IMG/VR virus record: IMGVR_UViG_3300031952_000001
Location: 124,001 to 188,000 of that record
DNA length: 64,000 bases
Reading direction: 5' to 3' (one strand)
Shown here: one piece after another, positions 7,417 to 59,760 of the stretch
Numbering within the stretch: the first letter of the stretch is position 1
Layout of the letters: each line of letters begins with the position of its first letter
Program-made: the position numbers and the translations under genes
Notes under the pieces: model-generated
What the model saw: only the letters and a program-made list of their open reading frames with translations
Databases searched by the model: none
What the model was told of the DNA's origin: nothing

Positions 7417-7605
7417 ATGAAAACCCTCATGGACGATCTCTTGTACGCTTGGGGAGAGTTGATCGATCTCAGGCGCAAGGTACGAGATAAAGGCGGGCCG
7501 TGGGGTGCGGCCGATCTGGCGGTACACGAAAGGCTCGTTTCTGAGATCGATACCCTCGTCGGGAGGTTGCCGGAGGGTTGGAAGGCGTGGAAGGAAGAGG
7601 GTTAG
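7417..7605 (+). CDS. hypothetical protein
   Basis: Packed ORF; TAG abuts the AATCGAC box of the next repeat. Confidence 0.65.
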   Translation: MKTLMDDLLYAWGELIDLRRKVRDKGGPWGAADLAVHERLVSEIDTLVGRLPEGWKAWKEEG

Positions 7606-7690
7606 AGAATCGACCACCCCACCCCTTGACCGCCCGCCACGGGTGGTTATGTTGTGAGGGTAGGGAACGAACAACGGAAAGGGGCGGAAC

Positions 7691-8026: not shown

Positions 8027-8109
8027 GAATCGACCGGCGACCACTTGCACGCCCAAAACCGATGGTTATATTGGTAGGGTAGCAGAAAAACCCACGGGAG
8101 GTGCGAGAC

Positions 8110-17348: not shown

Positions 17349-18673
17349 GGGGTCCTCCACACACCGCGCGGTGGCAATTCGTTGACATCGATGAAATCTT
17401 CGCAGTCGTCTTCGCACAGAGGCGGTGCAGAAAACCACGACTGCCACGAGGTGCTTTCGACAACGTAGCGATAGCACTTCTCCTTACGCGGACACCCGAT
17501 GCCGTCGCATTTCACAGAATCAGCGGGATTCACCTGCTGTCGCCAGTATTCCGCGAGATCACACGACCCGTCCGCAGGGTCGCGGCAGATGCAGATGAAC
17601 TCGGGTCCATCGGGGCAGATCTGCTTGTCGCAATGGCCGGTGGCGCAGTGAATCCAAGTACCCCCGCCCTCCCGCAGCCTATCCCGCTCGGCCTCCGCCT
17701 TCTCCGCCCGTGCCAGGGCGGCGTCTCGCTCGGATTCAACTGCCTCCAGTTTGTCGTACCATTCCCGGTCGGCTTTCTGTACCCATCGCTCCGCCTTCTC
17801 CGCGCGTGCCAGGGCGGCGGTGAGGGAAGTGCGAAGATTGATGCACTCCCGCACCACACGTTTTATCGCTACACAGTAGTCCTCAGTGTCGCCGAGATCG
17901 GGTATTTCACATACCGCACTTTCGAGATCATAATAGCTGTTTCGATTGCGTTCCAACTTGGCCACATTCTCCCGCAACTCCGCCTCGATCTTCTGTCCAT
18001 ACATCACATTGGCGGTCGCGATGTCCGCCCTCCCCCGCTCCGCTTCGAGAGCGGCTTCAAGCCTCTCTATCTCCGCCTGCGCTTCCAACTCGACCACGGT
18101 GTGCGACCGCGTGAGTTCCGCTAGCGCCGCGTCGTGCTCGGTGCGCTCCGCTTCGAGCGCAGCTTCCAGGCTCTCGATCTTGTCCAGCGCCACGTTCCCC
18201 ATCGCAAACGACTCCCGCTGGCGTAGGTGGGCGACCTCGGCTTCGATGGCGGCGATCCGCCTGCGTGCCAGGTCGTAAAAATCCAGTACCTCGGCGAGCC
18301 GTTTCCGCAAGGCGGCCTCGGTCGATTCGAGGGCGGCGATCCTCACCCGCCCCCCAGCGCAATCCGCGTGCAACGCGATCATCTCCGCGTGCAGCTCCGA
18401 TTTCTCTGCTTCAAGGGTGGTGATCCGCTTCTGCGCGGCATCCAGTATCTTGGCGGCGTGCGGCGGCAGAGGTAGGTAGGGAGAGTTATCAGGGTGACAG
18501 CCCCCGCGCGGCTCCGCGTCCAAGAGCTTGCACTCTTCGTCCGTCAGCTGGTCCCACAGCACGTCCAGCTGATCCAGGATCGCGTCTTCCTGCTCGGGGG
18601 TCACCTTGCAGGTGTCGAGCCCGTCGGAGAGGTAGTCTCGCAGCTCCTTGTACTTTTCGAGGGCTTCGCTCAT
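17345..18673 (-). CDS. long coiled-coil protein with C-terminal Cys-rich domain
   Basis: Heptad repeats (AALARAEKAE twice); CDGIGCPRKEKCYRY...CEDF. Confidence 0.65.
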   Translation of the reverse strand: MSEALEKYKELRDYLSDGLDTCKVTPEQEDAILDQLDVLWDQLTDEECKLLDAEPRGGCHPDNSPYLPLPPHAAKILDAAQKRITTLEAEKSELHAEMIALHADCAGGRVRIAALESTEAALRKRLAEVLDFYDLARRRIAAIEAEVAHLRQRESFAMGNVALDKIESLEAALEAERTEHDAALAELTRSHTVVELEAQAEIERLEAALEAERGRADIATANVMYGQKIEAELRENVAKLERNRNSYYDLESAVCEIPDLGDTEDYCVAIKRVVRECINLRTSLTAALARAEKAERWVQKADREWYDKLEAVESERDAALARAEKAEAERDRLREGGGTWIHCATGHCDKQICPDGPEFICICRDPADGSCDLAEYWRQQVNPADSVKCDGIGCPRKEKCYRYVVESTSWQSWFSAPPLCEDDCEDFIDVNELPPRGVWRTP

Positions 18674-19428
18674 TTCTTCCTCATCTCTTCCAGACTTCCA
18701 GGGATGGAGTCGAGGACAGCACGAAGGCATCGACTCCGCTCTGCGTCTCTGCCGGCGCTGTAACCGATACGGTAGAACGCGAACCCGATCACCCAGGCAA
18801 CCACGACGCAGGCCATCCACCCCCACATCAGCTGCCGCCCTTCTTCAGTATCGAGGTCGAGGTCAGCTCACCCCGCGGGCCGGTAGGTAGAGACAAGGGC
18901 GGTGACAGATCCGGCAGAAACCCAAAAGCCTCGCTCATAGCTTCCCGGAAGGCTATGAGCCGAGCCTGGGGGTGCCCACAGAACCCCGCAGGAGTGCTCG
19001 CGTACTTGCACCACCGAGGGTACCCGGGTGTCACAGGGTCGTAGGTTACATAGAAGCTGCACACCCTGGCAGGGCCCTCCGGGCTCGTGCACCGCAGCGC
19101 TACTTCGCAGGCGACCGGCGTGCTCATAGACCCTCCTTCTCGACGTCGACACCGCCCTCGGCCAACGACATGCGGCTTCCGGCGATGTTCTTGGCGTGCC
19201 GGAGCCCCAAGCTGGAGAGTTCCAGTACCCACCGCCGGTAGTGCTCCAGGAAATCGATCTTCCGATACAGCTGATGGATCTCCTCTTTGAGCTTCATGTT
19301 CTGGGCGTCGAGGTGGTCCCTCTCGTCCAGGATGTCCTGGACCTTGTTCTCCAGCTCGTGCTTCGTCAGCTTCCGTACCGCGAGCGGTGGCTTCTTCTTC
19401 GGCATGTGTCCTCCTGCTACTGCTCTGG

Positions 19429-31190: not shown

Positions 31191-31362
31191 AGCTCCAGAC
31201 CCTCAAGAAGAAGGCTAAGTGGGCCCTGAAGCACCGGCCGCTCTCTCTGGAGACCAAGCGGATGCTCGAAGAGCTACTCACGAACCCTCACCCCGAGAGC
31301 CTCCCGCCGGAAGCTCTGGAGCTGATCCGCCAGAAAGTGCAACCCGAGCTTTCCCCGACCCC

Positions 31363-31390
31363 TTGACACACCAAAATTGATGGTTACATT
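31363..31390 (+). promoter_or_regulatory. solo class 1 (early-type) promoter
   Basis: CCCCTTGACA-16-(TGGT)TACATT plus TAGGCAGGG...GAACAAGGAGG leader, as in the 0.8-8 kb array. Confidence 0.82.
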
Positions 31391-31420
31391 AGTAGGCAGG
31401 GAAGAACAAGGAGGTTCGGG

Positions 31421-43038: not shown

Positions 43039-43069
43039 TTTAAAAATCCAGAGAGACCTGTAGTATAGT
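43039..43069 (+). promoter_or_regulatory. class 3 promoter
   Basis: TTTAAAAATCC...TAG-TATAGT. Confidence 0.65.
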
Positions 43070-45856: not shown

Positions 45857-45888
45857 TTTAAAGATTCGACATCCGCGCGTGGTATAGT
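45857..45888 (+). promoter_or_regulatory. class 3 promoter
   Basis: TTTAAAGATTC...TGG-TATAGT. Confidence 0.65.
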
Positions 45889-45912
45889 GTCCCCTGTCCA
45901 AGGAGGACCTCT

Positions 45913-46693: not shown

Positions 46694-48826
46694 ATGCCGC
46701 AGGTCAGGCACACACTCAAGATCTCTAACTTGACCCACCTTACGGGTCAGGGACACCCCTTGTCTCTCGTCGGCGGAGACATCACAGGTGGTGCGCGGAA
46801 GACCGTGAAGCTCACGGTCCCGGTTCAGTCGTACATCGTGCTGGACCTCCACGAAGTCCAATTCGATGCCGACTTTGCGAACACCTTGAGCGAGTGGATC
46901 GATCAAGGCATGGTCGAGGTGCGCCTCGATGGGTTCCTCCAGACCTCGGCCCAGGTGAGCACCTACAAGTACGGAGGGGCCAGTGTCCCGGGGGCGAACT
47001 TCTTCACAGATCTCCAGGACGTCCCTGCCGACTATTCCAGCCATGCAGGGGAGCAGGTCATAGTCAACCCGACCGAAGACGGCTTGGAGTTTGGCCCCGC
47101 GGCAGGTTCCATCAACATCTTGTTCAACGGTGCCCCTCTCGGACCTGGGGTCACGAAGCTGAACTTCGTCAACGGACAGGATCCGGCTGCGTACGACGGT
47201 GTGCTCGCGCAGCTGGACTCCGATCCGACCCAGGTCAACGCCTTCATCCACCCGCCGGCCTTCGTGTCGCACTTCAACACGATGGACGGGACGACGAACG
47301 CCCTGGTGCCGGCGTATGCGACCTTCAACAGGTACCTCTCGAACCCGGGCGCGTTCGACATCACCGGTTGGGTGGCCGGAAACACCTACGCCGGCTTCCA
47401 TCAGACACCTCCGGGCGTCGGCGGCCCGATCCCCTACACCCTGGCGGGGAACTTCTCGATCCTGCTGAACGACGGCAGCTCGACGTTCCGCGTCTTCGTG
47501 ACGAGTGCGAGCGGAGCGATCCTTGCGGACCACGGCCCGGTCGGCATCCCCGCGGTCGGCTACAGCGCGACGGTCAACAACATCACGATCAACATCGGCG
47601 CGCTGGCGGGGGACTCGTACAAGTTCCAGGCGAGCCTGTCCGTGTCGGTCCTCATCGACAACATCATCCCCCTGGGCGGCAAGTACAGCATCACCCTGGT
47701 GCACGACGATGGGGCCGAGGGCATCTTCACCTACAGCAGCGGCAACCTGTTCCACGATCCGAACACGAACCCCGCGGTGATCTCGGGTGGCCCTCCCCCG
47801 ATCACCATCGTCGACAACGTCATCGTCGGGAAGTGGCTGAGCGGCATCCGCTACTACATCCGGAACGACACGTTCACCATCGGCATCACCGGGATCGACA
47901 ACATCAACTGCGAGTCCTACCCGCAGCCGTTCGTGACGCTCAACGCCACGGACTGGGGGATCGGGAGCGGTGGTGGTCTCGGCTGGCTCACGCTGAACAG
48001 CGCGGACCTGATCGGCTGGACAACCGCCTGGAACAACACGGGCGCGTCCCACTCGGCGACCTACACGATCACCCGGGTGAACTACCGCTTCATCAGCCCG
48101 GCGAACGCCTTCGTCTACTCCCGTCCCGAGGACTGGGTTTCTGGCGCGTGGGTGAACGACGGCGGGAACGCGGTCTGCATCGACACGTTCCTGCCCGACA
48201 GTGACGGGCTGAACGAATACTACACGGACGAGGCTCGCCGCCGGACCGCGTTCAACCTGGTCGGTGCGTACAACCCGGGCGTGGCTTGGGTCAGCACCCA
48301 GGACATGCAGGCCTACGACGACAACGCCGGGGCCATGGTGCAGTCAGGACAGCTCCAGAGGCGCGTCACGAACTGGACGGGTCACCGACCGGGCCTGGGG
48401 GCGAACGCGGACTACAGTGGCGCTCAGCCCGCCACGCAGACGTTCTACCGCCGCTACCAGGCCAGCGACGGGACCTACCATGGGAGCTGCCGGTTCACGT
48501 TCAACAACGCAGCCGTCGTGGCGGACTTGCTCGCGAGCCGAACCCGCCTCTGGGTCTTCATCCCGAACGGCGTCTGGCGCATCCGCGGCCGGGCCCACAG
48601 CGGAGTGCTGTGGGCGGCGACCTTCAACCTGGTCGTTCAGAATGGTGGCGTGTACGACAACGTACTCGACGTGCCGATCTACACGGCGAGCGCCGGCAAC
48701 ACCTTGGACGTGTCGTTCGGATCCTTCGGTCTGGGCGGCGCGTACATGCCGATCAACTATTTCGAAATGCACCTGGAGCTGACCGCACTGTCGACGGCCG
48801 TCAGTTCCATTCAGGTCAGCTGGTAG
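46694..48826 (+). CDS. virion structural/fibre protein
   Basis: Beta-rich G/N/T composition; shares an N-terminal LHEVQxD domain and the FTDLxDVP repeat with 41341. Confidence 0.75.
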   Translation: MPQVRHTLKISNLTHLTGQGHPLSLVGGDITGGARKTVKLTVPVQSYIVLDLHEVQFDADFANTLSEWIDQGMVEVRLDGFLQTSAQVSTYKYGGASVPGANFFTDLQDVPADYSSHAGEQVIVNPTEDGLEFGPAAGSINILFNGAPLGPGVTKLNFVNGQDPAAYDGVLAQLDSDPTQVNAFIHPPAFVSHFNTMDGTTNALVPAYATFNRYLSNPGAFDITGWVAGNTYAGFHQTPPGVGGPIPYTLAGNFSILLNDGSSTFRVFVTSASGAILADHGPVGIPAVGYSATVNNITINIGALAGDSYKFQASLSVSVLIDNIIPLGGKYSITLVHDDGAEGIFTYSSGNLFHDPNTNPAVISGGPPPITIVDNVIVGKWLSGIRYYIRNDTFTIGITGIDNINCESYPQPFVTLNATDWGIGSGGGLGWLTLNSADLIGWTTAWNNTGASHSATYTITRVNYRFISPANAFVYSRPEDWVSGAWVNDGGNAVCIDTFLPDSDGLNEYYTDEARRRTAFNLVGAYNPGVAWVSTQDMQAYDDNAGAMVQSGQLQRRVTNWTGHRPGLGANADYSGAQPATQTFYRRYQASDGTYHGSCRFTFNNAAVVADLLASRTRLWVFIPNGVWRIRGRAHSGVLWAATFNLVVQNGGVYDNVLDVPIYTASAGNTLDVSFGSFGLGGAYMPINYFEMHLELTALSTAVSSIQVSW

Positions 48827-48835
48827 GAGGAGAAC

Positions 48836-50137
48836 ATGTCGCTCGAAGGACGGTTGGAAAGCATTGTGCAGGATGGGGACGAGGTCATCTTGACCTATCG
48901 CGAGAGCGATACCACCTCGACGGTCCGCCGGCTTCAGCTGTCGGAGTTCGAGCGGCAGTTCGGCATGCTCTCCCTGTTCAACAAGAACAAGGAGTCCATC
49001 TCCGTCGACCCGGCGAAGGACGATCCGGAGATCGACACGCTCCAGGAGCTGGCGAACTTCCGGCAGGAGGTCCTGGAGGACCTGAAGAAGCGCGGCTCAC
49101 TCTTGCAGGCGAGTTACGACTCCCTGAAGGACTTCATCACGACGACCCTCGTCCAGCGTGAGAAGCTCGCTTCGGGCCTGAACGACAGTACAGGCAAGAG
49201 CCTCGCCTCTGTCGCCATGCTGCTGGAGCAGTCCAAGGAAGCCCAGAACAAGGCCTTGGACACCATCATCGGCCGCGACCAGACGATCCGGGCCATCATG
49301 TCCGACCTGGAGACCCGGAAGGAGTGGACCTGGGACAACGCCCGCCGCGTGCAGCGCGAGGTCGAGCTGAGCAACGCGGCTCTGGCCGAGTTCAAGGCCA
49401 AGACCGAGAAGCAGCTCACCGACATGAACGTTGCGTTGACGGCGAAGATGAACTCCTTCGACGGCATGTTGCAGAGGCTCCAGACCGACAAGGACATCAT
49501 GATCAAGGGTGTCGTCTCGGACGCCGAGCGCCTCATCGCGCAGCACCGGGCCGCCCTGGACGACAAGACCGAGATGCTGCGGATGCAGCAGATCGACATG
49601 TACAAGAATTCGTACCTGGAGAACGAGCTGATCCGCCGCACCGCGGTCGAAGCCGAGAAGGCCGGCATCGCGCAGCGGCAGTTCGACTCCTTCCAGAAGA
49701 AGATCGAGGAGAAGCTCGGGGCCATCAAAGAGACCCTCGCCGTGCAGAAGGCACGCCTGGGTGAGGGCTTCCAGCTGCCGGCCGAGCTGGTCGAGAGTCT
49801 CCTGAAGGAGGACCACTTCTCCGACCTCCAGAAGGCCATCGACCGGGAGTCCGTGGAGGTCGAGGAGCTGAAGGCCAAGCTGAACATCTGCGAGAGCCAG
49901 GCGGTCAAGGTCCGGGAGCTGTTGACCACCCTCATGAAGGCCTTGCAGGACGCTCCTGCGGAGGTCTTCGAGCTGGTGACGCAGCTGGACGAGAAGGCGA
50001 AGTCCTGGACCGAGAAGGTCGGCCTGCTGGAGACCGAACTGAAGAAGCGCGGTGCTCTGAAGGAGCTGACGAAGGTCGAGGTCGTGGAGAAGACCGAGGA
50101 GAAGAAGGGGTTCTTCAAGAGGTTGATCGGGAAGTAG
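48836..50137 (+). CDS. long coiled-coil protein
   Basis: Continuous E/K/L/Q heptads; C-terminal KKGFFKRLIGK amphipathic tail. Confidence 0.8.
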   Translation: MSLEGRLESIVQDGDEVILTYRESDTTSTVRRLQLSEFERQFGMLSLFNKNKESISVDPAKDDPEIDTLQELANFRQEVLEDLKKRGSLLQASYDSLKDFITTTLVQREKLASGLNDSTGKSLASVAMLLEQSKEAQNKALDTIIGRDQTIRAIMSDLETRKEWTWDNARRVQREVELSNAALAEFKAKTEKQLTDMNVALTAKMNSFDGMLQRLQTDKDIMIKGVVSDAERLIAQHRAALDDKTEMLRMQQIDMYKNSYLENELIRRTAVEAEKAGIAQRQFDSFQKKIEEKLGAIKETLAVQKARLGEGFQLPAELVESLLKEDHFSDLQKAIDRESVEVEELKAKLNICESQAVKVRELLTTLMKALQDAPAEVFELVTQLDEKAKSWTEKVGLLETELKKRGALKELTKVEVVEKTEEKKGFFKRLIGK

Positions 50138-50208
50138 GGACGAATAGGTATGCACGAATCTTGCAAATCTATGCAGTCTGAAAACCTCAAGAAAGAGGTT
50201 TCATAGTC

Positions 50209-51459
50209 ATGGCTTTCCTCTCGGAAGAATTAGTTAATTTCTCATTTAAGGGGTGGAACGCCCTTCTGGGCACGGCTAATAGAAATACATCGCCCAACAA
50301 TCTAGCGTGGTACGAAGAATTCTACCCTGCCGACGTCGAGGTGAAGCCCCTTCAGATCCTCGTCGAGTTCGACCAGATCCCGATTGCCCCGGATCTCGTG
50401 ACCGCGCAGGCGAACGCCGCGGCGGCCCCATCGAGGATCGCGGACTACTCCCTGGCGACAACCGCTATTCGGCTCACGCCAACGGTCAACCAGACTGCGT
50501 TCTTCGCTCTGAGCACCTTCGGTGACTGGACGACAAGAATGCAAAACTGGTTGCTCCCCCAGCACTACCCCTTGGCGGACGGAACCCCCTCGTTCGGGTA
50601 CCAGGTGCGGCTGTGGAACGGTGATCCGAATGCCGGTGGTGTCGAGATCTTTCCAACTACTGGAAAAATCGATGCTTTTACCGCTTGGACCTTCTCGTAC
50701 GGTGCCGGCGCTATCGTCATCGCCTCGAACGCAGTGGCGGCACTCATCACCGACGTCAACCAGGTATATATTCAAGGATTTCAATACGTTGGCCCCACGG
50801 GTGTCGTCGCCAGCACGGCGAAGATCTTCACGTACCCCTTCACGGCGCAGATGGCGATCACGGTGCCCCACAACCTGGGGACGAAGCGGCTGCTGTCCTA
50901 CATCCACGACGACGGCACCAACGATTTCGAGATCACCGGGGTGGCGGCGACCTGGCGGTACACGGACGACAACAACATCGACATCACCTTCGCGACCCCG
51001 ACCTCGGGGGTGGTCGTCGTGGGCAGCTTCGACGGCGAGACGTTCTACGGGGACTACGCCTCCGCGGTGAACCTGGTGCACGAGCATGCGTTCAACCAGA
51101 ACCACGGGTACAACACGTACGACCCGGTGACCTTCGACGACTACAGGTACGCCCTGTCGGCGTACACCTTCAACGGGGCCTACCAGGACCTGTCGAGCTG
51201 GGTGGCGGCTCGGGATGCGGAGTTCTGGCTGGTCGCAGGGATGCCGCGCCGGTACATGCAGACGTTCCCCAGCTCGACGACCTGGGTCGTGCAGCACAAC
51301 CTCGGCCGGCGGGAGGTGTTCCTGAGCGTCCAGGGCATCGGGGCCCTCGTCGGCGTGGACATGTACTCCATGGCGGCTACCGTGCAGAGAAATCTGAACA
51401 ATGTGACAATAACATGGGCTACTGCGAAGGCTGGCCGTGTTATGGTAGGGACAATCTGA
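50209..51459 (+). CDS. virion structural protein with HNLG repeats (fibre/baseplate-like)
   Basis: ITVPHNLGTK and WVVQHNLGRR repeats, each followed by NN.I/VxI.F/W...G.V. Confidence 0.7.
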   Translation: MAFLSEELVNFSFKGWNALLGTANRNTSPNNLAWYEEFYPADVEVKPLQILVEFDQIPIAPDLVTAQANAAAAPSRIADYSLATTAIRLTPTVNQTAFFALSTFGDWTTRMQNWLLPQHYPLADGTPSFGYQVRLWNGDPNAGGVEIFPTTGKIDAFTAWTFSYGAGAIVIASNAVAALITDVNQVYIQGFQYVGPTGVVASTAKIFTYPFTAQMAITVPHNLGTKRLLSYIHDDGTNDFEITGVAATWRYTDDNNIDITFATPTSGVVVVGSFDGETFYGDYASAVNLVHEHAFNQNHGYNTYDPVTFDDYRYALSAYTFNGAYQDLSSWVAARDAEFWLVAGMPRRYMQTFPSSTTWVVQHNLGRREVFLSVQGIGALVGVDMYSMAATVQRNLNNVTITWATAKAGRVMVGTI

Positions 51460-51468
51460 GGTGCATCG

Positions 51469-52908
51469 ATGAAGCAGCCATACGGAAACGCGCTACCGGC
51501 AGCCCCCACCAGGGGGGACTCCTGCTTCCGTGACGATGGGACTCTGCACTTCTGCTACACAGATGGAGTCTGGACTCAGATCAGCGGCGGGGCCTCTGCG
51601 TTCACGGACCTCACGGATGCTCCGGCGTCCTACGTCGGACAAGCGGGGAACGTCGTTTCGGTCAACCCGGGCGAGACCGGGTTGCAGTTCAGTCCCGCGG
51701 GCGGGACTTCTCGGCTGGAGTATGGCACTGCGGTTGTAGTCCAGGGGGATTCTACCAATTGTATAAGAATTGATTTCCCCCCTGAAGTGAACAGGCACGC
51801 GGCCGACATGTACAATCATCCGGGTGAGTATTTCGGTAAATGTAAGTTTGATGTCTTTGAAATTACAGGGGGGACACCAGCTAGCATTGTAAACTCCTGG
51901 CTCGGTCAAAGTTTTGCCAATATTGCAGCTCTGTATGCCTTCATACTCGCTAACTTTATTCCGGGGAGTGGTCCAGGAAGGGTAGCGAACTGGGCCCTCA
52001 TCAAGTGGTACGATGAAATCGACGACACCTATACACAGATTTCCAAGATCTGGGGGATCAACAAGTTCTACTCCATGCTGCGCGGCCGGGAGCACTACCG
52101 GGATTCCATTTACTGCCTCACCCCGGAGTGCATCCGCTGGAATAGGCTTGCTCTCTGGTTCGAGGACCTCTGTAACCAGAACGTAGGGTTCGGACCGGGA
52201 CACACATACAACCCTAATGATGAAAAAGCGATCTGGGTGTCCCGTAACGAAAAGAAGATGTACGGCCTGCCTCGTGCAGGGTTCACTTCATTTATAACCT
52301 CCGCTGGAGATCGGCGCATCTGGGACTGGGGTTCCTCTAGTTTTGACCCGCTTCCGGTACCGGTTGCTTATGTAAATACACCCTCTTGGGGGCTACCGCT
52401 CATGTACTGCCACCTCGACGTCAACACCGTTAGTTGGAGGTGGGATCCTGTTACCAATTATCTGTTCATGTATAATACCTCCCGTACTACATCGAGCACG
52501 GTGGTCTTATATGCCATGGAGTCTTCAGCTGACCCCAACCATCGGTCTTTGTTCTTGAAACCGCTCGGAATAGACCGCCTTGGTTTTAATTGGTTCGACT
52601 GCAGTATTTACGATCTGTACGGCCTCTATACCAGAAAAAATACGTCTCCTATCATACGGCAGCTTGCTGGCATTGCCCAGGAGACCGCCTCTCGTGACTT
52701 CGTGTGGGTCAACCGTCCCGGCTGGGACGTGGTTGCCCTCGGCCCTCAGGCTCGCTTATCGAAAAACATGGTGGGCTTGCAGCCCTGGACTACACAGTTT
52801 TTCCTGAGGGACAAAACGACCAAAAAAATATCTCGCGTCTCTGTAGCTCGCGTTGTTCGTTCTCAGAGGCACTACAACGCGCCCTTCAAGTACGAGGTGC
52901 GAAGATGA
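51469..52908 (+). CDS. fibre-anchored protein with unknown C-terminal domain (paralog A)
   Basis: N-terminal anchor shared with 53054, a FTDLTDAP repeat, and a ~400-aa domain homologous to 54941. Confidence 0.75.
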   Translation: MKQPYGNALPAAPTRGDSCFRDDGTLHFCYTDGVWTQISGGASAFTDLTDAPASYVGQAGNVVSVNPGETGLQFSPAGGTSRLEYGTAVVVQGDSTNCIRIDFPPEVNRHAADMYNHPGEYFGKCKFDVFEITGGTPASIVNSWLGQSFANIAALYAFILANFIPGSGPGRVANWALIKWYDEIDDTYTQISKIWGINKFYSMLRGREHYRDSIYCLTPECIRWNRLALWFEDLCNQNVGFGPGHTYNPNDEKAIWVSRNEKKMYGLPRAGFTSFITSAGDRRIWDWGSSSFDPLPVPVAYVNTPSWGLPLMYCHLDVNTVSWRWDPVTNYLFMYNTSRTTSSTVVLYAMESSADPNHRSLFLKPLGIDRLGFNWFDCSIYDLYGLYTRKNTSPIIRQLAGIAQETASRDFVWVNRPGWDVVALGPQARLSKNMVGLQPWTTQFFLRDKTTKKISRVSVARVVRSQRHYNAPFKYEVRR

Positions 52909-52920
52909 CAAGTTTATGCA

Positions 52921-53010
52921 GGTCCGCGAAGCGTCAGTCGGACCACCTAAGGTCTGCGAAGTGTCAGTCAGACCACAATAGGCCCGCGAAGCGTCAGTCG
53001 GGCCACTCAA
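52921..53010. repeat. triple 30-bp tandem hairpin array A
   Basis: GGTCCG/CGGACC, GGTCTG/CAGACC and GGCCCG/CGGGCC stems around the loop CGAAG(C/T)GTCAGT. Confidence 0.9.
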
Positions 53011-53015
53011 CGGAT

Positions 53016-53036
53016 GCCCTCGTGATGAGGGCTTCA
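53016..53036 (+). terminator. possible weak terminator or processing hairpin after array A
   Basis: GCCCTC-GTGAT-GAGGGC followed only by TTCA (no real U-tract). Confidence 0.3.
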
Positions 53037-53053
53037 CATAGGCAGTAGTCGCT

Positions 53054-54481
53054 ATGAAGTTCCCGTGCGGCGCAACTCTACTTCCGGCCCCAACGCAGGA
53101 CGACATCCAGGTCCGCACGACGGATGACACTGTGCACTACTGCAAGACCCCAGGGGTGTGGACCCCGCTCGCCGGGGGTGCCTCGGCTGCCTACCGCCTG
53201 TACGATGCGGTGGTGAGCGCCATAGGCACTCCCGGCGTAGATTGCGATTTCAACGACGTCCAGTCGGCTGTCAGCTCGGGCGCGAAGACGATCTACATCC
53301 GCAAGGGCACCTACCTCAACGTCGGAGCAGCGCTCACTTTCAACGGCTTGAACAACGTCCGTCTCATCGGAGAGGAGTGGTCGTCGACCATCATTCAGTC
53401 CGATGACTCCTTGAACCATGTCGTCGAGATGTTCAGTTGCAGTGACATGTCCTTCGAGAACATTAAGTTCGAGTTCGCTCTTCCACTGACTGGTGGGAAG
53501 GACGCCATCGTCTACACCGTAGGTGCATGCCACCGCATCAACTTCCGCCGCTGCTGGTTCTCTGGGGACAGCCCCCGCGCGGCTCCGGGTTTCGTAGAGC
53601 GCGGGATCTATTCTATGAACGGTGCGAAGACCTATTGGAATATTGACTGGTGCAGGTTCGACCGGTTGGCTTACTCGGGGATGACGCTGTATGACGGCTC
53701 CCCGGCGCGGGCTTGCAACTACATCAAGATCATCAACAACACGTTTACGGACGGAAGTGGGAACTTCGGTCTCGACACGTACGTTGGCTGCAAGTTCTGG
53801 GTCATCTCCTTCAACCACTTCGAGAACCTGAACTCGCCGGTTGCCAGTATTAGCGGGGCGCTGTTTTTTAACGGCCAGGCCGGCAGCTCGCTCAACCTCA
53901 AGCACGCGGTGTCGTTCAATGTCTTCAAGAATGTCCCCCTTGCCTGTCAGTTCGATCATAACTGCCACGAGATCATCATCAACGGGAACGTCTTTGACGG
54001 TACCGACGTGAACATCCGGTTCTGTCGCAACGACAACACACGGCATCATGTGAGTAACAACTACAACCATGGTGCTACCGCACTTAACGTGGACATCGAC
54101 TATACCAGCTTGGATGTGGACGCCGTCTTCTACCTCGGAGGAAACTGGCAGAACGAGCTGTGGAGGATCGTAGGAGATCCCAACCAGCCGGCGTACCTGA
54201 ACTCTTGGACGTTCGTAACGGCGTCTGCGAACGGCGCTGCGTTCGTCGTGGATGACAGCCACGAGGTCCTCCTCAGAGGGAACGTGACGGGTGGCTCCAT
54301 CGGTACGGTGATCTTCACGTTGCCTCCCAACCACAGACCCCCGGACTACCCCAGGCGCTTCGTCGTTGAGAGCAACGGCGGCTACGGGCTCGTGGAGGTC
54401 AACACGGCTGGGCAGGTGACCGCGCTGGCGGGCGACCCCACTCGGATCTGCTTGGACGGGATCCGGTTCAGAGTGAACTGA
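53054..54481 (+). CDS. tail spike/fibre with parallel beta-helix and C-terminal fibre-tip domain
   Basis: DFNDVQSAV...IYIRKGTY...VRLIGE beta-helix cap; C-terminal VLLRGNV..G..GTVIFTLPPNHRP typical of tail-fibre tips. Confidence 0.8.
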   Translation: MKFPCGATLLPAPTQDDIQVRTTDDTVHYCKTPGVWTPLAGGASAAYRLYDAVVSAIGTPGVDCDFNDVQSAVSSGAKTIYIRKGTYLNVGAALTFNGLNNVRLIGEEWSSTIIQSDDSLNHVVEMFSCSDMSFENIKFEFALPLTGGKDAIVYTVGACHRINFRRCWFSGDSPRAAPGFVERGIYSMNGAKTYWNIDWCRFDRLAYSGMTLYDGSPARACNYIKIINNTFTDGSGNFGLDTYVGCKFWVISFNHFENLNSPVASISGALFFNGQAGSSLNLKHAVSFNVFKNVPLACQFDHNCHEIIINGNVFDGTDVNIRFCRNDNTRHHVSNNYNHGATALNVDIDYTSLDVDAVFYLGGNWQNELWRIVGDPNQPAYLNSWTFVTASANGAAFVVDDSHEVLLRGNVTGGSIGTVIFTLPPNHRPPDYPRRFVVESNGGYGLVEVNTAGQVTALAGDPTRICLDGIRFRVN

Positions 54482-54933
54482 TGGCACGCGGCATAGAAAA
54501 ATGGGTCACCGGGCAGCAGTACAAGATGGGCGATTTTGTGATCGCCGAAAATCAAGAGCTGTTTGTCTGCATGTTCAACAACACCGCAGGGGCCAACTTC
54601 CTGACGGACCTCATCACGAACCACTACTGGGAGTACGTTTCCGCGCGCCAGACCATTCAGCCGGTGAACAGCAACATCGCCATCACTCCCGTCCGGCCGT
54701 ACCTTTACCTCGTGGACTGCTGGAACAACCCGGTCACGATCACCATCGACAGTAGCTTTTCTCCCGAGGGCTTGGAAATCTGCTTCAAGAAGGTCCGGGG
54801 CACGTACCCATTGACGCTGGTGAATGGAGGTGGGACCTTGATCGACGGGCAGGCGTCTTATCCGATCACGCCTCTCATGGAAACCCTTCGCATGGTCTAC
54901 GACACGAACCTGTCGTACTGGTGGATAGTGTGA
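54481..54933 (+). CDS. small virion adaptor protein
   Basis: WVTGQQYKMGDFV (CBM5/12-like N-terminus); T(L)IDG...Y...WWIV fibre-type repeat. Confidence 0.6.
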   Translation: MARGIEKWVTGQQYKMGDFVIAENQELFVCMFNNTAGANFLTDLITNHYWEYVSARQTIQPVNSNIAITPVRPYLYLVDCWNNPVTITIDSSFSPEGLEICFKKVRGTYPLTLVNGGGTLIDGQASYPITPLMETLRMVYDTNLSYWWIV

Positions 54934-54940
54934 GGACACC

Positions 54941-56128
54941 ATGAGCTTCAAAGACAAATCGTACAAGAAGGTCATGTACGACTCCTTCCTCTGCGTTGCA
55001 GTGGATGATCCTGTCGGCGCAGCTCTTTGGTACGGCAGGATGCGACGAACTGCTCCGACTCTCGAAGATGATGAGACGCGCCTTTTCGGTCATGCGTTCT
55101 ACGACATCACCTTCCGCATCGGAGGCGCTGTTCTGAACCAGATAGAAGGGCTCACCCTTCCGGCGAACCTCGGGGCTCTGGCAGCCGCCGTGATGGCAGT
55201 GACGCCGAACGGCGGTGGTGTTTACACCCAAAACGCTGTCGTCACCGTGTACGACAAGGTCGACTACTCGATTCCGCGGATCGAGAAGGTCTACGGTATC
55301 AACACCCCCATGTACCAGATTCGGGGGCGGCGGCACGGCCGCGACCATAGGACCGCCGTTGCGCGTCCCTACTCCGCAGGAGGCCAGCGGTGGCCTGCCC
55401 TCTATGATTTCATCCCCGCAGCGTTCCAGGCGTGCTGGGGTATGATCCCAACCACCGTCCCTTCGGACGCCAACGGTGGTTTCCGAACCCTGTGGACGGG
55501 TTCTGATAGTCGGAAGCGCTTTGGTGCTCCGAAGGCCGGAATGGTCACCCAAGGGTATCTTCCCGGGGAGCGTTACTACTACGACGATATTGCGAATACC
55601 TACAACGACTGCTTTGGTATTGAGATGACCATCGGATCCCCAGTCATCTGTTCCTGGGTGTCTTATGATACGTGGTGGTGGTACCTCTACTACCAGCAGG
55701 AAAATACAAGAATGGCCTTTATCTATCCGCAGTGCCTTGTATACCCTCTGTACGATTTTGCTAATCCGAACCGCAAGGCCTTGTTGGTAAAGGCCCTTGG
55801 GATCGACAGTGTCCATGTGGACCGTTACGACACCTCACGCTACATGCTGGAGGTCGTTGGGGTTCGCAAGGACCGCACTCCGAAGCTGTTGAAGCAGTTC
55901 AGTGGCTCCCCTGGCGACTACAGTGAGTGGAGGAATGCTTTCAGGATCCCGAAGGCTAGCTGGCTGCCGAAGCAGGGGAGCCTGATGGGTGCGGGAAGCA
56001 TCGAAGCCTGGAGGTTGAAGTTCCGTCTTCGTGACACCCTCACGAACCGGGTGGGGGCTTTCTCGAACGCGAGCATCGTACCGGTCATGAACACCCGGTA
56101 CCGGAGGTTGTTCTTCATGGTGAAATAA
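54941..56128 (+). CDS. protein of unknown function (paralog B of the 51469 C-terminal domain)
   Basis: YDKVD...IEKVYGIN...IRGRRHGRD; RKALLVKALGID; FRLRDTLT align with 51469. Confidence 0.75.
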   Translation: MSFKDKSYKKVMYDSFLCVAVDDPVGAALWYGRMRRTAPTLEDDETRLFGHAFYDITFRIGGAVLNQIEGLTLPANLGALAAAVMAVTPNGGGVYTQNAVVTVYDKVDYSIPRIEKVYGINTPMYQIRGRRHGRDHRTAVARPYSAGGQRWPALYDFIPAAFQACWGMIPTTVPSDANGGFRTLWTGSDSRKRFGAPKAGMVTQGYLPGERYYYDDIANTYNDCFGIEMTIGSPVICSWVSYDTWWWYLYYQQENTRMAFIYPQCLVYPLYDFANPNRKALLVKALGIDSVHVDRYDTSRYMLEVVGVRKDRTPKLLKQFSGSPGDYSEWRNAFRIPKASWLPKQGSLMGAGSIEAWRLKFRLRDTLTNRVGAFSNASIVPVMNTRYRRLFFMVK

Positions 56129-56147
56129 CCATGTTGACATTCAAGTA

Positions 56148-56234
56148 GGTCGCCTGGCTTAAAGTGCGACCGACTGAAGGCCGCCTGGATTCGAGTGCGG
56201 CCGATGGGGAGGCCGCCTGGATTAAAGTGCGGCC
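56148..56234. repeat. triple 31-32-bp tandem hairpin array B
   Basis: GGTCGC/GCGACC, GGCCGC/GCGGCC and GGCCGC/GCGGCC stems around the loop CTGG(C/A)TT(AA/CG)AGT. Confidence 0.9.
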
Positions 56235-56279
56235 GATGAGAGAAAGGGTTCTGATCTTGCGCCCGGCGGGGCCCGGTGT

Positions 56280-56310
56280 TTTAGAAATCCGAAACCCGCC
56301 ATAGTATACT
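56280..56310 (+). promoter_or_regulatory. class 3 promoter
   Basis: TTTAGAAATCC...TAG-TATACT. Confidence 0.65.
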
Positions 56311-56373: not shown

Positions 56374-57033
56374 ATGTACCTGTACCTCAGATGTCTGGGC
56401 TCCACGAACGTGACGGTCACGGGCGACAACAACGTCCCGAACGTCTCTCTCACCAAGGGCGAGACGGAGACGGTGCTGGCGTCCCAGGCCATGGGCAACG
56501 TCGTGTTCTGCGACTCGTGCGCGAGCCTCATCACGAAGGCCCACCTCGAAGTCCGCGTCGGCACGGCCACCGGCCGCATCCTGACGGCGGCGGAGATGGA
56601 AGCCGTGAAGAACGGCACGCTGTTCGATCTCGACGAGGACGGCATGGTCGACGAGGCCGAGCACCTCGCGGGCGTCGAGTTCACCATCGATCTGGTGGAC
56701 GGCGTGACCGAGTGGTCGATGGTCCTCCCGGGCGACGGCTCCAAGCGGTTCATCCCGAAGCGCGCCCTCGTGCTGTGCACCGAGGACGACACCCTGGCGG
56801 CGGACGCGACCCTGAGCATCGGCACGGCTCCGGCCGGCACCCAGTACCTCAACGGCGTGGCGCTCACCGGCCTCAACAACACGAACATGGCTATCGAGAA
56901 GGTCATCGACGCCACGACGACGGCGATTCCGGCGGTCGCGGACAACGCGACCCTCTACTGCCGTCTCGCAGCGGCGGACACCGGCACGTCCGGCACCGCG
57001 AAGGTCGTGGTCGAGGGCACTTTCGTCGGCTAG
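56374..57033 (+). CDS. probable virion decoration/structural protein
   Basis: T/A/G/V-rich; N-terminus weakly resembles those of 41341 and 46694; class 3 promoter and AAGGAG RBS. Confidence 0.65.
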   Translation: MYLYLRCLGSTNVTVTGDNNVPNVSLTKGETETVLASQAMGNVVFCDSCASLITKAHLEVRVGTATGRILTAAEMEAVKNGTLFDLDEDGMVDEAEHLAGVEFTIDLVDGVTEWSMVLPGDGSKRFIPKRALVLCTEDDTLAADATLSIGTAPAGTQYLNGVALTGLNNTNMAIEKVIDATTTAIPAVADNATLYCRLAAADTGTSGTAKVVVEGTFVG

Positions 57034-58859
57034 GACCCACTTCGCGCTAGCATCCAGGTACCCTTTGTTGTATGGTAGGGCCTCGTCTGTCCTACACAAC
57101 GAGGTGCCAACATGCCCGAACTGAAAAACGCCGCTGAGACCGAGGAGGTCATCGGCGGGGACGTTCTTCGGAACTCCATCGACATCGTCACGAAGCCCGT
57201 CCTGGACCACCTGGAGGCGTCCGTCCTCCGGGCCATGGGGCTCATCACCGAGCAGGCTCCGAACCTGACGGAGCAGGAGAAGCTCCACTCCGAGGCCATC
57301 ATGTACGAGACCGCGGCCCTGACCTGCATCGGCCGGGTTCTCCAGATCGCCAACCAGGTCGACGCGGGCCGGCAGCTCGCCCTCCGGGATTCGCTCTGGA
57401 GCCAGCTGGACCTGATGAGGAGCCCTGCCGGTGAGCCAAAAGCGGATTAAGGACAAGCTGAAGCGCAAGGACGCCGTCCAGGCGCTCCGCGGGCTCGACT
57501 CTGTGAAGCAGCTCCCCGAGCTGCTGAAGCAGGCCTTGGAGGTCAACCAGGCCCTCGTCGAGGAGAACGCCCGGCTCAACGCCGAGGTCAGCAACATCCT
57601 CGAAGAGCACGACCAGCGCTTGACCACCCTGGAGAACGTCCTCGTGAAGAACTTCGCCGCCGCCACAGGAGGGTCTCATGACGGGTAACTACATCCACGT
57701 CCTACTGGACAAAAATCCAGGTGGTACCGAGGGCCAAGAGATCTGCGGCGGCTGCAAGCTCACCCTTCCGGATGACCTGGTGGGTTGGGAGGAGTTCCTC
57801 AACGGCGAATACGTGCCCGAGCCCCCGAACGCCGAGGGTTACTACCCGGTGCTCATCCTTCCGAAAGGGTATCGAAGGGGTGAGGTGGTGCTCGTCGAGC
57901 ATGAAGTCCTTTACGCCCGGCCGGCGCTCCGACGAAGGGACCTCTTCGTGTGGAGCGACCCCAAGCAAGGTGCCCGGATCGAGAAGCGCTGGAGCGTTCC
58001 TCTGCCCAAGATGACCTGCTCCCTGAACAACCCACTTTGGAGGAAGGTGCTATGAACCCAGACCGCGTCATCGTCGAGATCAAGACCAGCGAGCAGCACG
58101 GCAAGGCGTTCTGCGACGAGGGGTGCGACCACTTCGTGCTCTTCGTGAACTTCCCTCCGCAGGGCATCTGCAAGGTCTGCGGACCGCTCGCCGAGCCGGA
58201 CTCCTTGAACCGCTTCCCGCGTCACCTCGCCTGCAAGTACATCTGCGGCGAGGAGGTCCCCGAGCGCTTCTGGAGCCCGATGAGGGACGGCTGATGTCCC
58301 GCCTCTCCGAGGTCCTCGCGAAGCTCCAGAGGGAGTGCCCGGTCGGCGAGGACGGCCAGCCCGTCGGCGTCACCTACGAGGCCATCGTCGAGGCCCTCCG
58401 GCTCCACAAGATCGGGGAGGACTGGATCCTCCAGCAGCTCAGAGACATCGTCATCGCGGAGCTTGCGGCCGGCGTGGCTGCCTACCAAGGCACATGCGGG
58501 CCCGAGATCCGCTCTGCAACCCTGCACATCGCCGATGGCCGGCAGCTGGTCGCCTTGCTGAACGGCATCGTGGATGTCCAGGAGAAGCTCCGAAAGGAGC
58601 AGGAGGACTCATGGAAGAGACCAGAGCCACCTGGGTCTGGGTCCGATTCCCCGGACTCGGGAGAATCGAAGCCCAGATCCCCATCCCCGCCGACTGCTTC
58701 AGCTCCTCAGGAGAGCTGATCAAGGAAGACGCCATCGAGTACGTCGAGCGGTGGATGACCGACGACCTCAAGATGGAGTACGGCTGCTGCGAGACCCGGG
58801 AAGAGATCCCTGAGGTCTCCCCCGGCGAGCACTACTTCGGCATCTCGACCTCCACCTAG

Positions 58860-59760
58860 AGTTCAACCCTACCTTTAAGACCTTCAAGGTACCTTCAACC
58901 CTACCTTACCCTAGCCTTCAACCCTACTTTGAAAACCTTCAACCCTACCTTGAACCTTTGTTTTAACCACCACCAAGGTATAGTCAAGACCCCCTTGGTA
59001 CCCCTTCTGGGAGCTGAAAATACCATAGGTTTGAACCCTTCAAAGAGGTCTTGACTATACCTTCCTGGCGGTTGCATCGATGGTTACTATTTTATTAGAA
59101 GTTATACGTTTCATAACCCGAAATACTGTCAAAATTATTCAATGATTTATAGCGAACTAGCCTCTTGACTATACCTTGCCGACGGTTAGTGGCATACCTT
59201 CATAGGGTTGGAAGTCAAGGGGAAGATGGGCCTCAAATTCAACCCTCCCGGGAAGGGTCTTGGGTTGCAACCGCTGGTAAACAAGATGTCAAGGCCTTTT
59301 GAAGGGTGTTAGAAGGCCTAGCCGCTCAAGGCCGCGCGCCGTGCGCCACTGGTATTCTTGCGCTTTTCAACTGGGTATTGCAGCTGGTGTCCGTTTTTAC
59401 AGTATTTCTATCTTTCTAACTCGGTTTTCAACCTTTTCAACCCTGTTTTTGCGTTTTTTGCCGAGGGTATTCCTCAGATCCTTCAGAACTCTTCAGTTCC
59501 TTCAGAGTTCTTCAGGATCTTCAGAATACCCCCAGATGATCTACAGGAACTCTATAGCTATGTACAAGAACCACTTGGGATCAGGATCGTCCGATCCTAT
59601 TGATCCAGCTTTGTAAGTTTATTCATCAAAATTAGACTGGGATCGTCTGTACGACTTACCTTTAAGGGGCTCGAAGAGCATTCAACTTGGGAAAACCCCC
59701 GGGGCGATTTTTACATCATTTGGTGATGTATTGGCAAGGTATGCCTACAACCCGTAGGGT
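58860..59760. repeat. non-coding repeat block upstream of the packaging genes
   Basis: TTCAACCCTAC at 58862, 58894, 58917, 58938; TCTTGACTATACCTT at 58975-58989 (inverted), 59049 and 59163; C(T/C)TCAG run at ~59472-59524; AT-rich 59085-59150. Confidence 0.75.

What the first reader, a model, noticed from the sequence alone, without database searches (positions are those of the whole stretch)
51469..56234. Two paralogous virion-locus proteins, each followed by its own triple-hairpin array with covarying stems: candidate protein + structured RNA module
Seen: ORFs 51469-52908 and 54941-56128 share a ~400-aa domain (YDEID..ISKIWGIN..LRGREHYRD vs YDKVD..IEKVYGIN..IRGRRHGRD; RSLFLKPLGID vs KALLVKALGID; FFLRDKTT vs FRLRDTLT). 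Within 12-19 nt of each stop codon begin three tandem hairpins (52921-53004 and 56148-56234). All six units have the same grammar: A + 6-bp GG-start stem + 12-nt loop C-N8-AGT + stem ending CC + 6-8-nt linker. Every stem change between copies is compensated on the other strand (GGTCCG/CGGACC to GGTCTG/CAGACC to GGCCCG/CGGGCC; GGTCGC/GCGACC to GGCCGC/GCGGCC). The 8-nt loop core is paralog-specific (GAAG(C/T)GTC vs TGG(A/C)TT(AA/CG)). The loop C can pair with the G of AGT, leaving a bulged T/U. I saw no such array behind other genes in the window. Inference: structure is under selection and has travelled with this protein domain, suggesting a cognate ligand. Three hairpins would match the trimeric stoichiometry usual for phage fibres, and the domain has an R/K-rich C-terminus, so a ribonucleoprotein fibre tip or RNA-assisted trimer assembly is possible. 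Alternatives are autoregulatory operators, or ssDNA recombination sites for module swapping. I do not recognise this arrangement from any known system.
Basis: partly seen in the sequence, partly recalled or inferred. Interest (0 to 1): 0.88.

Follow-up and report, generated by a model that had tools for sequence, protein, structure and literature searches.

The report
Phage protein family with triple-hairpin RNA tail
A large, uncharacterised family of basic phage proteins, found among tail-type genes, is always followed, just after the stop codon, by three small RNA hairpins whose stems covary and whose loops stay the same within each gene, which points to a previously undescribed protein-linked RNA element, perhaps a protein-RNA pair.

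Summary
The two ORFs are paralogs (24% identity, E 2e-18). Each is followed by exactly three hairpins with a 6-bp stem and a 12-nt loop, and a covariance model finds no other such array in the 64-kb window.

The same arrangement recurs behind every relative examined: 29 arrays in about 20 phage contigs, from 100% down to about 20% protein identity, in GC-rich and AT-rich genomes. This includes three distant family members picked arbitrarily. A protein-blind DNA-pattern scan of viral contigs recovered only arrays behind family genes.

- Stem pairing: 410 Watson-Crick pairs, 29 G.U pairs on the sense strand, 0 A.C pairs.
- Covariation: 17 of 18 stem pairs show compensatory changes.
- Position: the arrays lie between the stop codon and a terminator-like hairpin, so they are 3'-UTR RNA.
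- Loops: more conserved than stems within an array, yet different between paralogs in one genome.
- The array tracks the C-terminal ~400-aa domain, not the swappable N-terminal anchor.
- The domain is basic (median pI 8.8), has no Pfam match except an N-terminal Mtd_N hit in one member, and has no PDB fold relative despite a pLDDT 94 model.

Function is not shown. My best guess is three binding sites for the gene's own product. No Rfam family or paper describes it.

The parts
51469..52908 (+). Paralog 1, 479 aa. It has an N-terminal ~45-aa anchor motif, a low-confidence linker (aa 41-79) and a C-terminal ~400-aa basic domain of unknown fold. It is the last gene of a run of closely spaced + strand genes, 46694-52908.
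   Evidence: ORF list. Family alignment A1. AF2 pLDDT 77.6 with aa 41-79 low. pI 8.6, last 40 aa net charge +9. 18 full-length metagenomic homologs.
52920..53007 (+). Array 1: three hairpins at 52921-52944, 52951-52974 and 52981-53004. Stems are GGTCCG, GGTCTG and GGCCCG. The loop is CGAAG(C/T)GTCAGT. Linkers are 6 nt.
   Evidence: Covariance model 87.3 bits. RNAfold gives three separate hairpins with the extra C-G pair and a bulged U.
53016..53034 (+). Terminator-like hairpin GCCCTC-GTGAT-GAGGGC followed by TT. It is conserved in L004 and L010. After it comes CACATAGGCAGTAG, a motif that recurs before the next gene in related loci.
53054..54481 (+). Control gene, 475 aa. It shares only the first ~45 aa (the anchor) with paralog 1, has a different, acidic C-terminal part, and has no hairpin array after it.
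   Evidence: hhalign matches residues 1-57 only, probability 95.5. pI 5.6. No covariance-model hit.
54941..56128 (+). Paralog 2, 395 aa. It consists of the C-terminal domain alone, without the anchor.
   Evidence: AF2 pLDDT 93.8, pTM 0.89. No PDB fold match. pI 9.5, last 40 aa net charge +8. Orthologs P0034 (69% identity) and P0035 (44% identity).
56147..56237 (+). Array 2: three hairpins at 56148-56171, 56179-56202 and 56211-56234. Stems are GGTCGC and GGCCGC. The loop is CTGG(C/A)TT(AA/CG)AGT. Linkers are 7-8 nt.
   Evidence: Covariance model 33.6 bits, E 1.7e-6. Orthologous arrays in L068 and L067 keep the loop CTGGATTA(A/G)AGT while the stems are replaced.
56259..56310 (+). A GC-rich segment ending in TGTTTT (a weak terminator candidate), followed by a promoter-like site TAGAAA-17-TATACT before gene 56374-57033.
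   Evidence: Assignment is tentative.

Best explanation
Shown: each array is a structured RNA element in the 3' untranslated end of the mRNA of a gene encoding one particular C-terminal ~400-aa basic domain. It consists of three independent hairpins. Each hairpin has a 6-bp stem, a bulged U on the 3' side, one closing C-G or U-A pair and a ~9-nt apical loop. The array begins a median of 12 nt after the stop codon and lies ahead of a terminator-like hairpin.

Inferred: the three hairpins are three equivalent, sequence-specific binding sites. The ligand diversifies together with the upstream gene, so it is most simply that gene's own protein product, bound through its basic domain and tail. Binding of the free protein to the 3' end of its own message could do one of two things. 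It could hold three newly made chains together and so help an oligomer form. Or it could report the pool of unassembled protein back to the message as feedback on mRNA life or output. I cannot tell these two apart.

Stems only have to pair and to differ from one another, so that each hairpin folds locally. Loops have to match the ligand.
For: 1. Linkage to the domain.
- Every family gene examined carries an array: 29 arrays. The loci are the window, L004, L005 (4 tandem paralogs), L007, L010, L012-L016, L019, L020, L022, L028 and L067-L071.
- Family membership of the divergent genes was confirmed by hhalign, probability 99.4-99.8.
- Three distant representatives chosen arbitrarily all have an array.
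- The neighbouring gene that shares only the N-terminal anchor has none. Non-family neighbours have none.
- A protein-blind pattern scan of viral contigs gave five true arrays, all behind family genes, and one coding-repeat false positive.

2. It is RNA.
- Stem pairs count 410 Watson-Crick, 29 G.U on the sense strand, 0 A.C.
- 99.5% of cells are paired, 17 of 18 pairs carry double changes, and 0 of 500 shuffles reach this. Slid controls pair at 18-50%.
- A terminator-like hairpin or U-run follows. L022 has a textbook intrinsic terminator.

3. There is a specific ligand.
- Within arrays, loops are 86-88% identical, stems 72-76% and linkers 54-57%.
- Orthologs at 44-69% protein identity keep the loop CTGGATTA(A/G)AGT while all stems are replaced.
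- The four arrays in one genome (L005) have four different loops.
- Unit number (3), stem length (6) and loop length (12 in 61 of 74 units) are held constant down to about 20% protein identity.
- Unit stabilities are modest, -2 to -10 kcal/mol, and weak in AT-rich L022.
- The conserved bulged U is supported.

4. The protein is a plausible binder.
- Median pI of the domain is 8.8 and the last 40 aa carry a median net charge of +6, over 154 family members.
- In the window the two paralogs have pI 8.6 and 9.5, while the large neighbouring proteins of the module have pI 4.2-5.6.
Against: - No binding has been shown.
- The fold has no relative, so there is no known RNA-binding motif to point to.
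- A basic surface could equally serve to bind an anionic cell-surface polymer if this is a receptor-binding protein.
- Gene and array are inherited together, so some of the paralog-specific loop pattern is expected from descent alone.
- The loops share a loose common 3' half (U-purine-rich-(G/A)-U), which would also fit one common factor.
- Known bacterial and phage autoregulatory sites lie at the 5' end of the message, not the 3' end (general knowledge).
- L003 shows two units where L004 shows three.
- L021 has a different unit fold.
Confidence: 0.4

Rival explanations
1. Passive 3'-end element. The three hairpins, together with the terminator, only protect the message from 3'-to-5' exonucleases or strengthen termination and insulation of the cassette, as REP/BIME elements do in bacteria. 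They follow this family only because gene and 3' end were duplicated as one unit.
For: The arrays sit between the stop codon and a terminator-like hairpin at the end of transcription units. Bacterial genomes hold REP-like tandem hairpins of similar size in the same kind of position. In L020 the third hairpin is followed directly by a U-run.
Against: Loops are better conserved than stems within arrays and are kept across 44-69% protein identity while the stems turn over. Number, stem length and loop length are fixed over very deep divergence. Six-bp stems with 12-nt loops are weak barriers, -2 to -4 kcal/mol in L022. Other genes of the module in the window end without such arrays.
Confidence: 0.25
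2. Binding sites for a different trans-acting factor. This would be a phage or host RNA-binding protein or ribonuclease that recognises the shared features (bulged U, closing pair, purine-rich 3' half of the loop) and controls the timing, decay or location of these messages.
For: The grammar is common to all subfamilies: A at loop position 10 in about 80% of units, G/A at position 11, U at position 12 in about 85%. The position-1 to position-11 pair holds across subfamilies.
Against: The 5' half of the loop is subfamily-specific and differs between arrays of one genome. No candidate factor is linked to the arrays in the loci. The only constant neighbour is the family gene.
Confidence: 0.15
3. 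Source of small RNAs. The array is cut out of the 3' UTR into hairpin RNAs that act in trans, by base pairing or as decoys.
For: Tandem units with identical loops resemble processed repeat RNAs such as type III antitoxin repeats (general knowledge). The array is a separate structural block after the stop codon.
Against: Loops show no complementarity to the gene's own 5' region or coding sequence beyond that of non-cognate controls: -6.3 against -6.5 kcal/mol. No Rfam family matches. No defence-system match for the proteins. No other target was searched for.
Confidence: 0.08
4. Single-stranded DNA sites for cassette exchange. The hairpins fold in DNA and mark the boundary of swappable gene cassettes, like integron attC sites.
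For: Cassette-like behaviour: 1 to 4 gene-plus-array units per genome, and array sequence specific to each cassette while structure is conserved, with an extrahelical base. G.T wobbles would also be tolerated in DNA.
Against: Short stems with 12-nt loops are poor DNA hairpins, and weak in AT-rich genomes. The arrays are three direct units rather than one long imperfect palindrome. By inspection there are no attC core sites. No recombinase is seen next to them in any locus. The transcribed position before a terminator fits RNA.
Confidence: 0.07

Closest known systems
REP/BIME elements (repetitive extragenic palindromes) of bacteria
   Same: Short hairpins in tandem, placed after stop codons and before terminators. 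They can stabilise the upstream message. I found similar-looking arrays in bacterial contigs L030, L031, L034, L037 and L040.
   Different: REPs are one sequence dispersed at many sites of a genome, in variable number and orientation, and are moved by RAYT transposases (general knowledge). Here each array is unique to its gene and always has three direct units. Its loop is conserved while its stems are free to change, and it is tied to one protein domain across many phages.
Type III toxin-antitoxin systems (ToxIN: a protein plus an adjacent array of RNA repeats that bind it in a 3:3 complex)
   Same: A protein gene next to short tandem RNA repeats that are cognate to that protein. The ToxIN complex is threefold (general knowledge).
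   Different: ToxI repeats lie upstream of the toxin gene, are 36-nt pseudoknots with identical units, and are cut by the toxin itself (general knowledge). The proteins here give no PADLOC hit, are about 400 aa with a new fold, and sit among tail-type genes.
Coat-protein operator hairpins of RNA phages (MS2, PP7, Qbeta)
   Same: A small hairpin with one bulged base and a specific loop, read by a viral structural protein. Different coat proteins pair with different hairpins (general knowledge).
   Different: Those are single hairpins at a translation start, in RNA genomes. Here there are three copies at the 3' end of a DNA-phage message, with the bulge on the 3' side.
'Downstream element' RNA motifs found by comparative genomics behind phage structural genes (for example Mu-gpT-DE; recalled from memory, not found in the paper library)
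   Same: A conserved RNA structure consistently located just downstream of one kind of phage structural gene, with unknown function.
   Different: No Rfam model matches these arrays at gathering or permissive thresholds. The triple-repeat design with paralog-specific loops is not part of those descriptions as far as I know.
Hairpin downstream of the variable region of DGR target genes (Bordetella phage Mtd)
   Same: A hairpin right after the 3' end of a tropism-determinant gene. One family member carries an Mtd_N domain.
   Different: That is a single GC-rich hairpin with a 4-nt loop, acting in DNA or cDNA homing, and it needs a template repeat and a reverse transcriptase (general knowledge). 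No template/variable repeat pair exists in the window.
Integron attC sites
   Same: Linked to a cassette, conserved in structure but not in sequence, with extrahelical bases.
   Different: attC is one long imperfect palindrome with core sites, folds as bottom-strand DNA and needs IntI (general knowledge). None of these features is seen here.

Membership tests
Any Rfam 15 RNA family | Match to a curated covariance model | tested here: not met
   No match at gathering score in the whole window. In permissive mode the only hit over the two arrays is an 11-bit snoRNA chance hit.
REP/BIME | The same palindrome dispersed at many intergenic sites of the genome | tested here: not met
   Only two sites in 64 kb, and they differ from each other. 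In the related loci the arrays occur only behind family genes. The remaining 148 kb of the contig was not examined.
REP/BIME | An associated RAYT (IS200/IS605-type Y1) transposase | not tested
   No systematic search was made. The only IS605-type gene seen is a TnpB in L003/L004, away from the arrays.
Type III toxin-antitoxin (ToxIN, CptIN, TenpIN) | An endoribonuclease toxin of a known family, with the repeat array upstream of it | tested here: not met
   No PADLOC, Pfam or NCBIfam hit for the proteins. The arrays lie downstream of the gene.
CRISPR array or RNA anti-CRISPR repeat mimic | Repeats separated by unique spacers, or a copy of a host CRISPR repeat | tested here: not met
   Units are contiguous, with 5-8-nt linkers and no spacers. 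Sequences differ between arrays of one genome. Host repeats are unknown, so mimicry could not be checked.
Diversity-generating retroelement target | A variable region at the 3' end of the gene with a near-identical template repeat elsewhere, plus a reverse transcriptase | tested here: not met
   No repeat of either gene's 3' end is present in the window. The rest of the contig was not examined.
Integron cassette (attC) | A single imperfect palindrome with R''/R' core sites, and IntI nearby | tested here: not met
   By inspection there are three separate direct hairpins and no GTTRRRY core. No integrase appears among the called genes of the loci.
Phage tail fibre or receptor-binding protein | A recognisable fibre or RBP domain, or virion proteomics | tested here: inconclusive
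   Only the N-terminal ~40 aa hit PHROG tail or virion families. One relative has Mtd_N and one has Laminin_G_3 in its N-terminal part. The C-terminal domain has no Pfam hit and no fold relative.
New family proposed here: C-terminal basic domain plus triple-hairpin 3' element | Family gene followed within about 60 nt by three tandem hairpins with covarying stems and array-constant loops | tested here: met
   Both window genes meet it, as do all 27 further arrays examined. The family has 397 representative clusters at E<=1e-3.

The most novel reading that the evidence does not exclude
The domain and its array form a cognate ribonucleoprotein pair. Each paralog's product binds the three hairpins on the 3' end of its own message, which then acts as a three-seat scaffold for oligomer assembly, or stays attached as an RNA part of the mature structure. 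Phage genomes would then carry up to four mutually orthogonal protein-hairpin pairs side by side. That would be a new way of assembling or controlling tail-type proteins and a natural set of orthogonal RNA tags.
Probability: 0.3. Interest if true: 0.9.

Novelty: new variant of a known kind. Interest (0 to 1): 0.78.

Why it matters
Conserved RNA structures tied to a single protein family are rare in phages, and those known mostly sit at the 5' end of a message or act as terminators. Here a large unannotated family (about 400 clusters at 50% identity) keeps a precise three-hairpin design at the 3' end of its message over very deep divergence. Such conservation is hard to explain without a function.

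- If the hairpins are read by the encoded protein, this is a new class of phage RNA-binding domain with a new fold. It would come with many natural, mutually distinct protein-hairpin pairs, useful as orthogonal RNA tags.
- It could also show how phages control or assemble multi-copy tail-type proteins.
- Even on the conservative reading, it defines a new RNA motif and a rule that helps annotate these genes and their transcription-unit ends in metagenomic phages.

Tried and rejected
- Rfam, at gathering and permissive thresholds: nothing.
- Nucleotide search of GenBank phages: no match.
- Pfam, NCBIfam, PADLOC and a PDB sequence profile for the domain: nothing.
- Fold search of two models against PDB and of one against BFVD: no relative. 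Only about 100-residue Ig-like local resemblances at TM<=0.17.
- DGR idea: no template/variable repeat in the window.
- Loop pairing with the gene's own 5' region or coding sequence: no better than non-cognate controls.
- Extra loop pairs 2-10 and 3-9: at chance level. Only the 1-11 pair is supported.
- Shine-Dalgarno-like or CsrA-like reading of the loops: rejected by eye, because GGA/GGAGG is absent from most loops.
- Covariance-model search with default filters missed divergent arrays, so filters had to be switched off.
- The first alignment was too divergent for the metagenome scan. The second scan returned only 5 loci.
- The genome-contig pattern scan gave mostly GC-rich coding repeats and a few REP-like arrays. 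None was behind a family gene as far as inspected.
- Four literature searches found no description of this arrangement.
- L021 (23% identity) has three 32-nt units inside a long outer stem, and I could not fit them to the common hairpin.


Full report
**1. Observation**

The window is part of a 211,982-bp viral contig, IMGVR_UViG_3300031952_000001, with 60% G+C.

ORFs 51469-52908 (479 aa) and 54941-56128 (395 aa) are real open frames. They are paralogs: BLASTP gives 24% identity over about 400 aa, E 2e-18.

Tandem Repeats Finder lists two arrays with a ~30-nt period in the whole window. They lie at 52920-53006 and 56147-56238, with 2.9 copies each.

**2. The arrangement is conserved far beyond this genome**

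A search of 5.8 billion proteins gave 18 full-length homologs of paralog 1, at 32-60% identity over the aligned stretch, all unnamed. I fetched their contigs and read the DNA after each stop codon. Every one carries three tandem hairpins of the same design.

- Viral-contig scans added L017, L019, L020 and L022 with arrays of the common design. L021 has three 32-nt units that I could not fit to it.
- Orthologs of paralog 2 (L068 at 69% identity, L067 at 44%) also carry arrays.
- Several loci hold two to four family genes in tandem, each with its own array. L005 has four.
- Divergent members were confirmed as family by profile comparison, probability 99.4-99.8%.

A profile search of 1.84 billion representative proteins finds 397 clusters at E<=1e-3 and 291 at E<=1e-10. 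The domain is always at the C-terminus, behind variable N-termini. I picked three distant representatives arbitrarily (P0150, P0177, P0120), and all three have a triple-hairpin array after the stop codon.

The tally is 29 arrays, 74 distinct units and 61 distinct stem sequences. Loop length is 12 nt in 61 units, 11 in 7 and 13 in 6. One assembly (L003) shows two units where the near-identical L004 shows three.

**3. The link is to the C-terminal domain and is specific**

Negative controls in the window:
- The gene between the paralogs (53054-54481) shares only the first ~45 aa with paralog 1 and has no array.
- Paralog 2 lacks that N-terminal piece and does have an array.
- The two genes upstream of paralog 1 are not family members and have no array.

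A covariance model built from 12 arrays was run with filters off. In the window it finds only the two arrays. In eight related loci it finds only arrays behind family genes.

A DNA pattern that encodes three units but knows nothing of the protein was scanned across 2.9 million viral contigs. It returned six places. Five are arrays behind family genes, one of them new (L028, a family member at 22% identity). One is a coding pentapeptide repeat.

The same pattern in 596 Gb of bacterial and archaeal genomes returned 38 places. Most are GC-rich repeats with poor pairing. A few are REP-like tandem hairpins. The general shape therefore exists in bacteria, but not this linked form.

**4. It is RNA, and it is structured**

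On an ungapped alignment of 12 arrays, 99.5% of stem cells form standard pairs and 17 of 18 pairs show changes on both sides. None of 500 shuffles reaches this, and sliding the partner by 1-3 columns drops pairing to 18-50%.

Over all 74 units the stems hold 410 Watson-Crick pairs, 29 G.U pairs on the sense strand, no A.C pair and one other mismatch. The sense strand is therefore the one that folds. My unit detection allowed G.U but not A.C. However, all three units of every array were accounted for, so the bias is small.

The arrays begin a median of 12 nt after the stop codon, range 5-62. Most are followed within about 10-15 nt by a short GC hairpin with a U-rich tail. In AT-rich L022 that hairpin is a textbook intrinsic terminator. 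After it comes a recurring ACATA(G/A)-type motif and the next gene. The family gene is thus the last gene of its transcription unit, and the array is part of its 3' UTR.

Loop position 1 pairs with position 11 in 36 of 45 distinct loops, against 28 expected, with C-G exchanging for U-A. This leaves position 12, nearly always U, bulged. Other candidate loop pairs are at chance level.

**5. Signs of a specific ligand**

- Within arrays, loops are 86-88% identical, stems 72-76% and linkers 54-57%. By my own arithmetic on those counts the loop-versus-stem difference is about 6 standard errors, although the comparisons are not independent.
- Between orthologous arrays, loops drift to 55-69% identity.
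- In the paralog-2 lineage the loop CTGGATTA(A/G)AGT is kept at 44-69% protein identity while the stems are wholly replaced.
- Arrays within one genome have different loops.
- Single units are only moderately stable, -2 to -10 kcal/mol, and weak in L022. That is poor design for a passive exonuclease block.
- Loops are not complementary to the gene's own 5' region or coding sequence beyond non-cognate controls.

**6. The protein**

Pfam, NCBIfam, PADLOC and a PDB sequence profile give nothing for the domain.

A model of paralog 2 from a 129-sequence alignment is very confident (pLDDT 93.8, pTM 0.89). Even so it has no PDB fold relative: best E 0.03, TM<=0.16, with only local Ig-like similarity.

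The N-terminal ~40 aa hit PHROG tail and virion families. One relative has an Mtd_N domain. Neighbours in the window include a tail-protein hit, and a terminase lies 5 kb downstream. A tail-fibre or receptor-binding role is therefore plausible but not shown.

The domain is basic. Median pI is 8.8, and the last 40 aa carry a median net charge of +6, over 154 members. In the window the paralogs have pI 8.6 and 9.5, while the large neighbouring proteins of the module have pI 4.2-5.6.

**7. Interpretation**

Shown: a new conserved 3'-UTR RNA element of three bulged hairpins, tied to one large family of basic phage proteins with an unknown fold.

Inferred, confidence about 0.4: the hairpins are three equivalent binding sites for the product of the upstream gene. 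They would serve either assembly of an oligomer or feedback from unassembled protein.

Rivals:
- A passive stabiliser or terminator aid (0.25).
- Sites for another factor (0.15).
- A source of small RNAs (0.08).
- Single-stranded DNA cassette sites (0.07).

**8. Comparison and novelty**

The closest known things are REP/BIME elements, type III toxin-antitoxin repeat RNAs, RNA-phage coat-protein operators, downstream-element RNA motifs of phage structural genes, the DGR target hairpin and integron attC sites. Each defining feature I could test is not met (see the membership table). No Rfam family matches and four literature searches found no description.

I rate it a new variant of a known kind, namely a gene-linked cis RNA element. 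There is about a 0.3 chance that it is something categorically new, a cognate protein-RNA assembly module.

Noticed in passing
window 838-8095, plus 31360-31413, 59050-59078 and 59163-59187: Thirteen or more copies of a 54-80-nt repeat that holds a sigma-70-like promoter (CTTGAC, 17 nt, TACATT) and a conserved leader. Each copy lies ahead of a small ORF, so this is probably the early-gene region.
   Followed up: no
window 58720-59300 and 59474-59526: A ~580-nt non-coding stretch with tandem 12/21-nt repeats (58890-58956), a 45-nt inverted repeat (58953-58997 with 59041-59085) and promoter-like copies facing both ways. A second 19-nt tandem repeat lies at 59474-59526. It may be a replication origin or a regulatory hub.
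   Followed up: no
window ~43040-43065, ~45860-45890 and 56282-56310: A recurring motif TTTAAAAATCC, about 17 nt, TAGTATAGT ahead of genes of the tail-type module. It may be a middle or late promoter.
   Followed up: partly
L003 and L004, 3449-4633 (minus strand): An IS605-type TnpB gene (OrfB_IS605 plus Cas12f1-like_TNB) is inserted between the homologs of window genes 48836-50137 and 50209-51459. It is absent from the window.
   Followed up: no
L003 7474-7588 versus L004 7474-7618: Two near-identical contigs from different samples differ by exactly one 30-nt hairpin unit (2 versus 3). This is either true copy-number variation or assembly collapse.
   Followed up: no
window 53054-54481 versus 51469-51600: The first ~45 aa are shared at 45% identity between two adjacent genes with unrelated C-terminal parts. 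This looks like a swappable N-terminal anchor, as in phages with several receptor-binding proteins.
   Followed up: partly
L021 6950-7085: Behind a distant family member (23% identity, AT-rich) lie three 32-nt units enclosed by a 17-bp outer stem. The unit fold does not fit the common hairpin.
   Followed up: partly
L020 7143-7240: The third hairpin of this array is followed directly by a run of T, so here the last unit may itself serve as the terminator.
   Followed up: no
L030 1290-1420, L034 4280-4450, L037, L040 1210-1360, L031: Bacterial genome contigs (Caldilineaceae, a Deltaproteobacteria MAG, Thiohalocapsa, Bacteroidetes, PVC group) carry REP/BIME-like tandem hairpins with 6-bp stems and 12-nt loops in 4-7 copies after genes.
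   Followed up: partly
window 17345-18826 (minus strand): A 492-aa ORF with a weak PHROG hit to the SbcC-like subunit of the palindrome-specific endonuclease.
   Followed up: no
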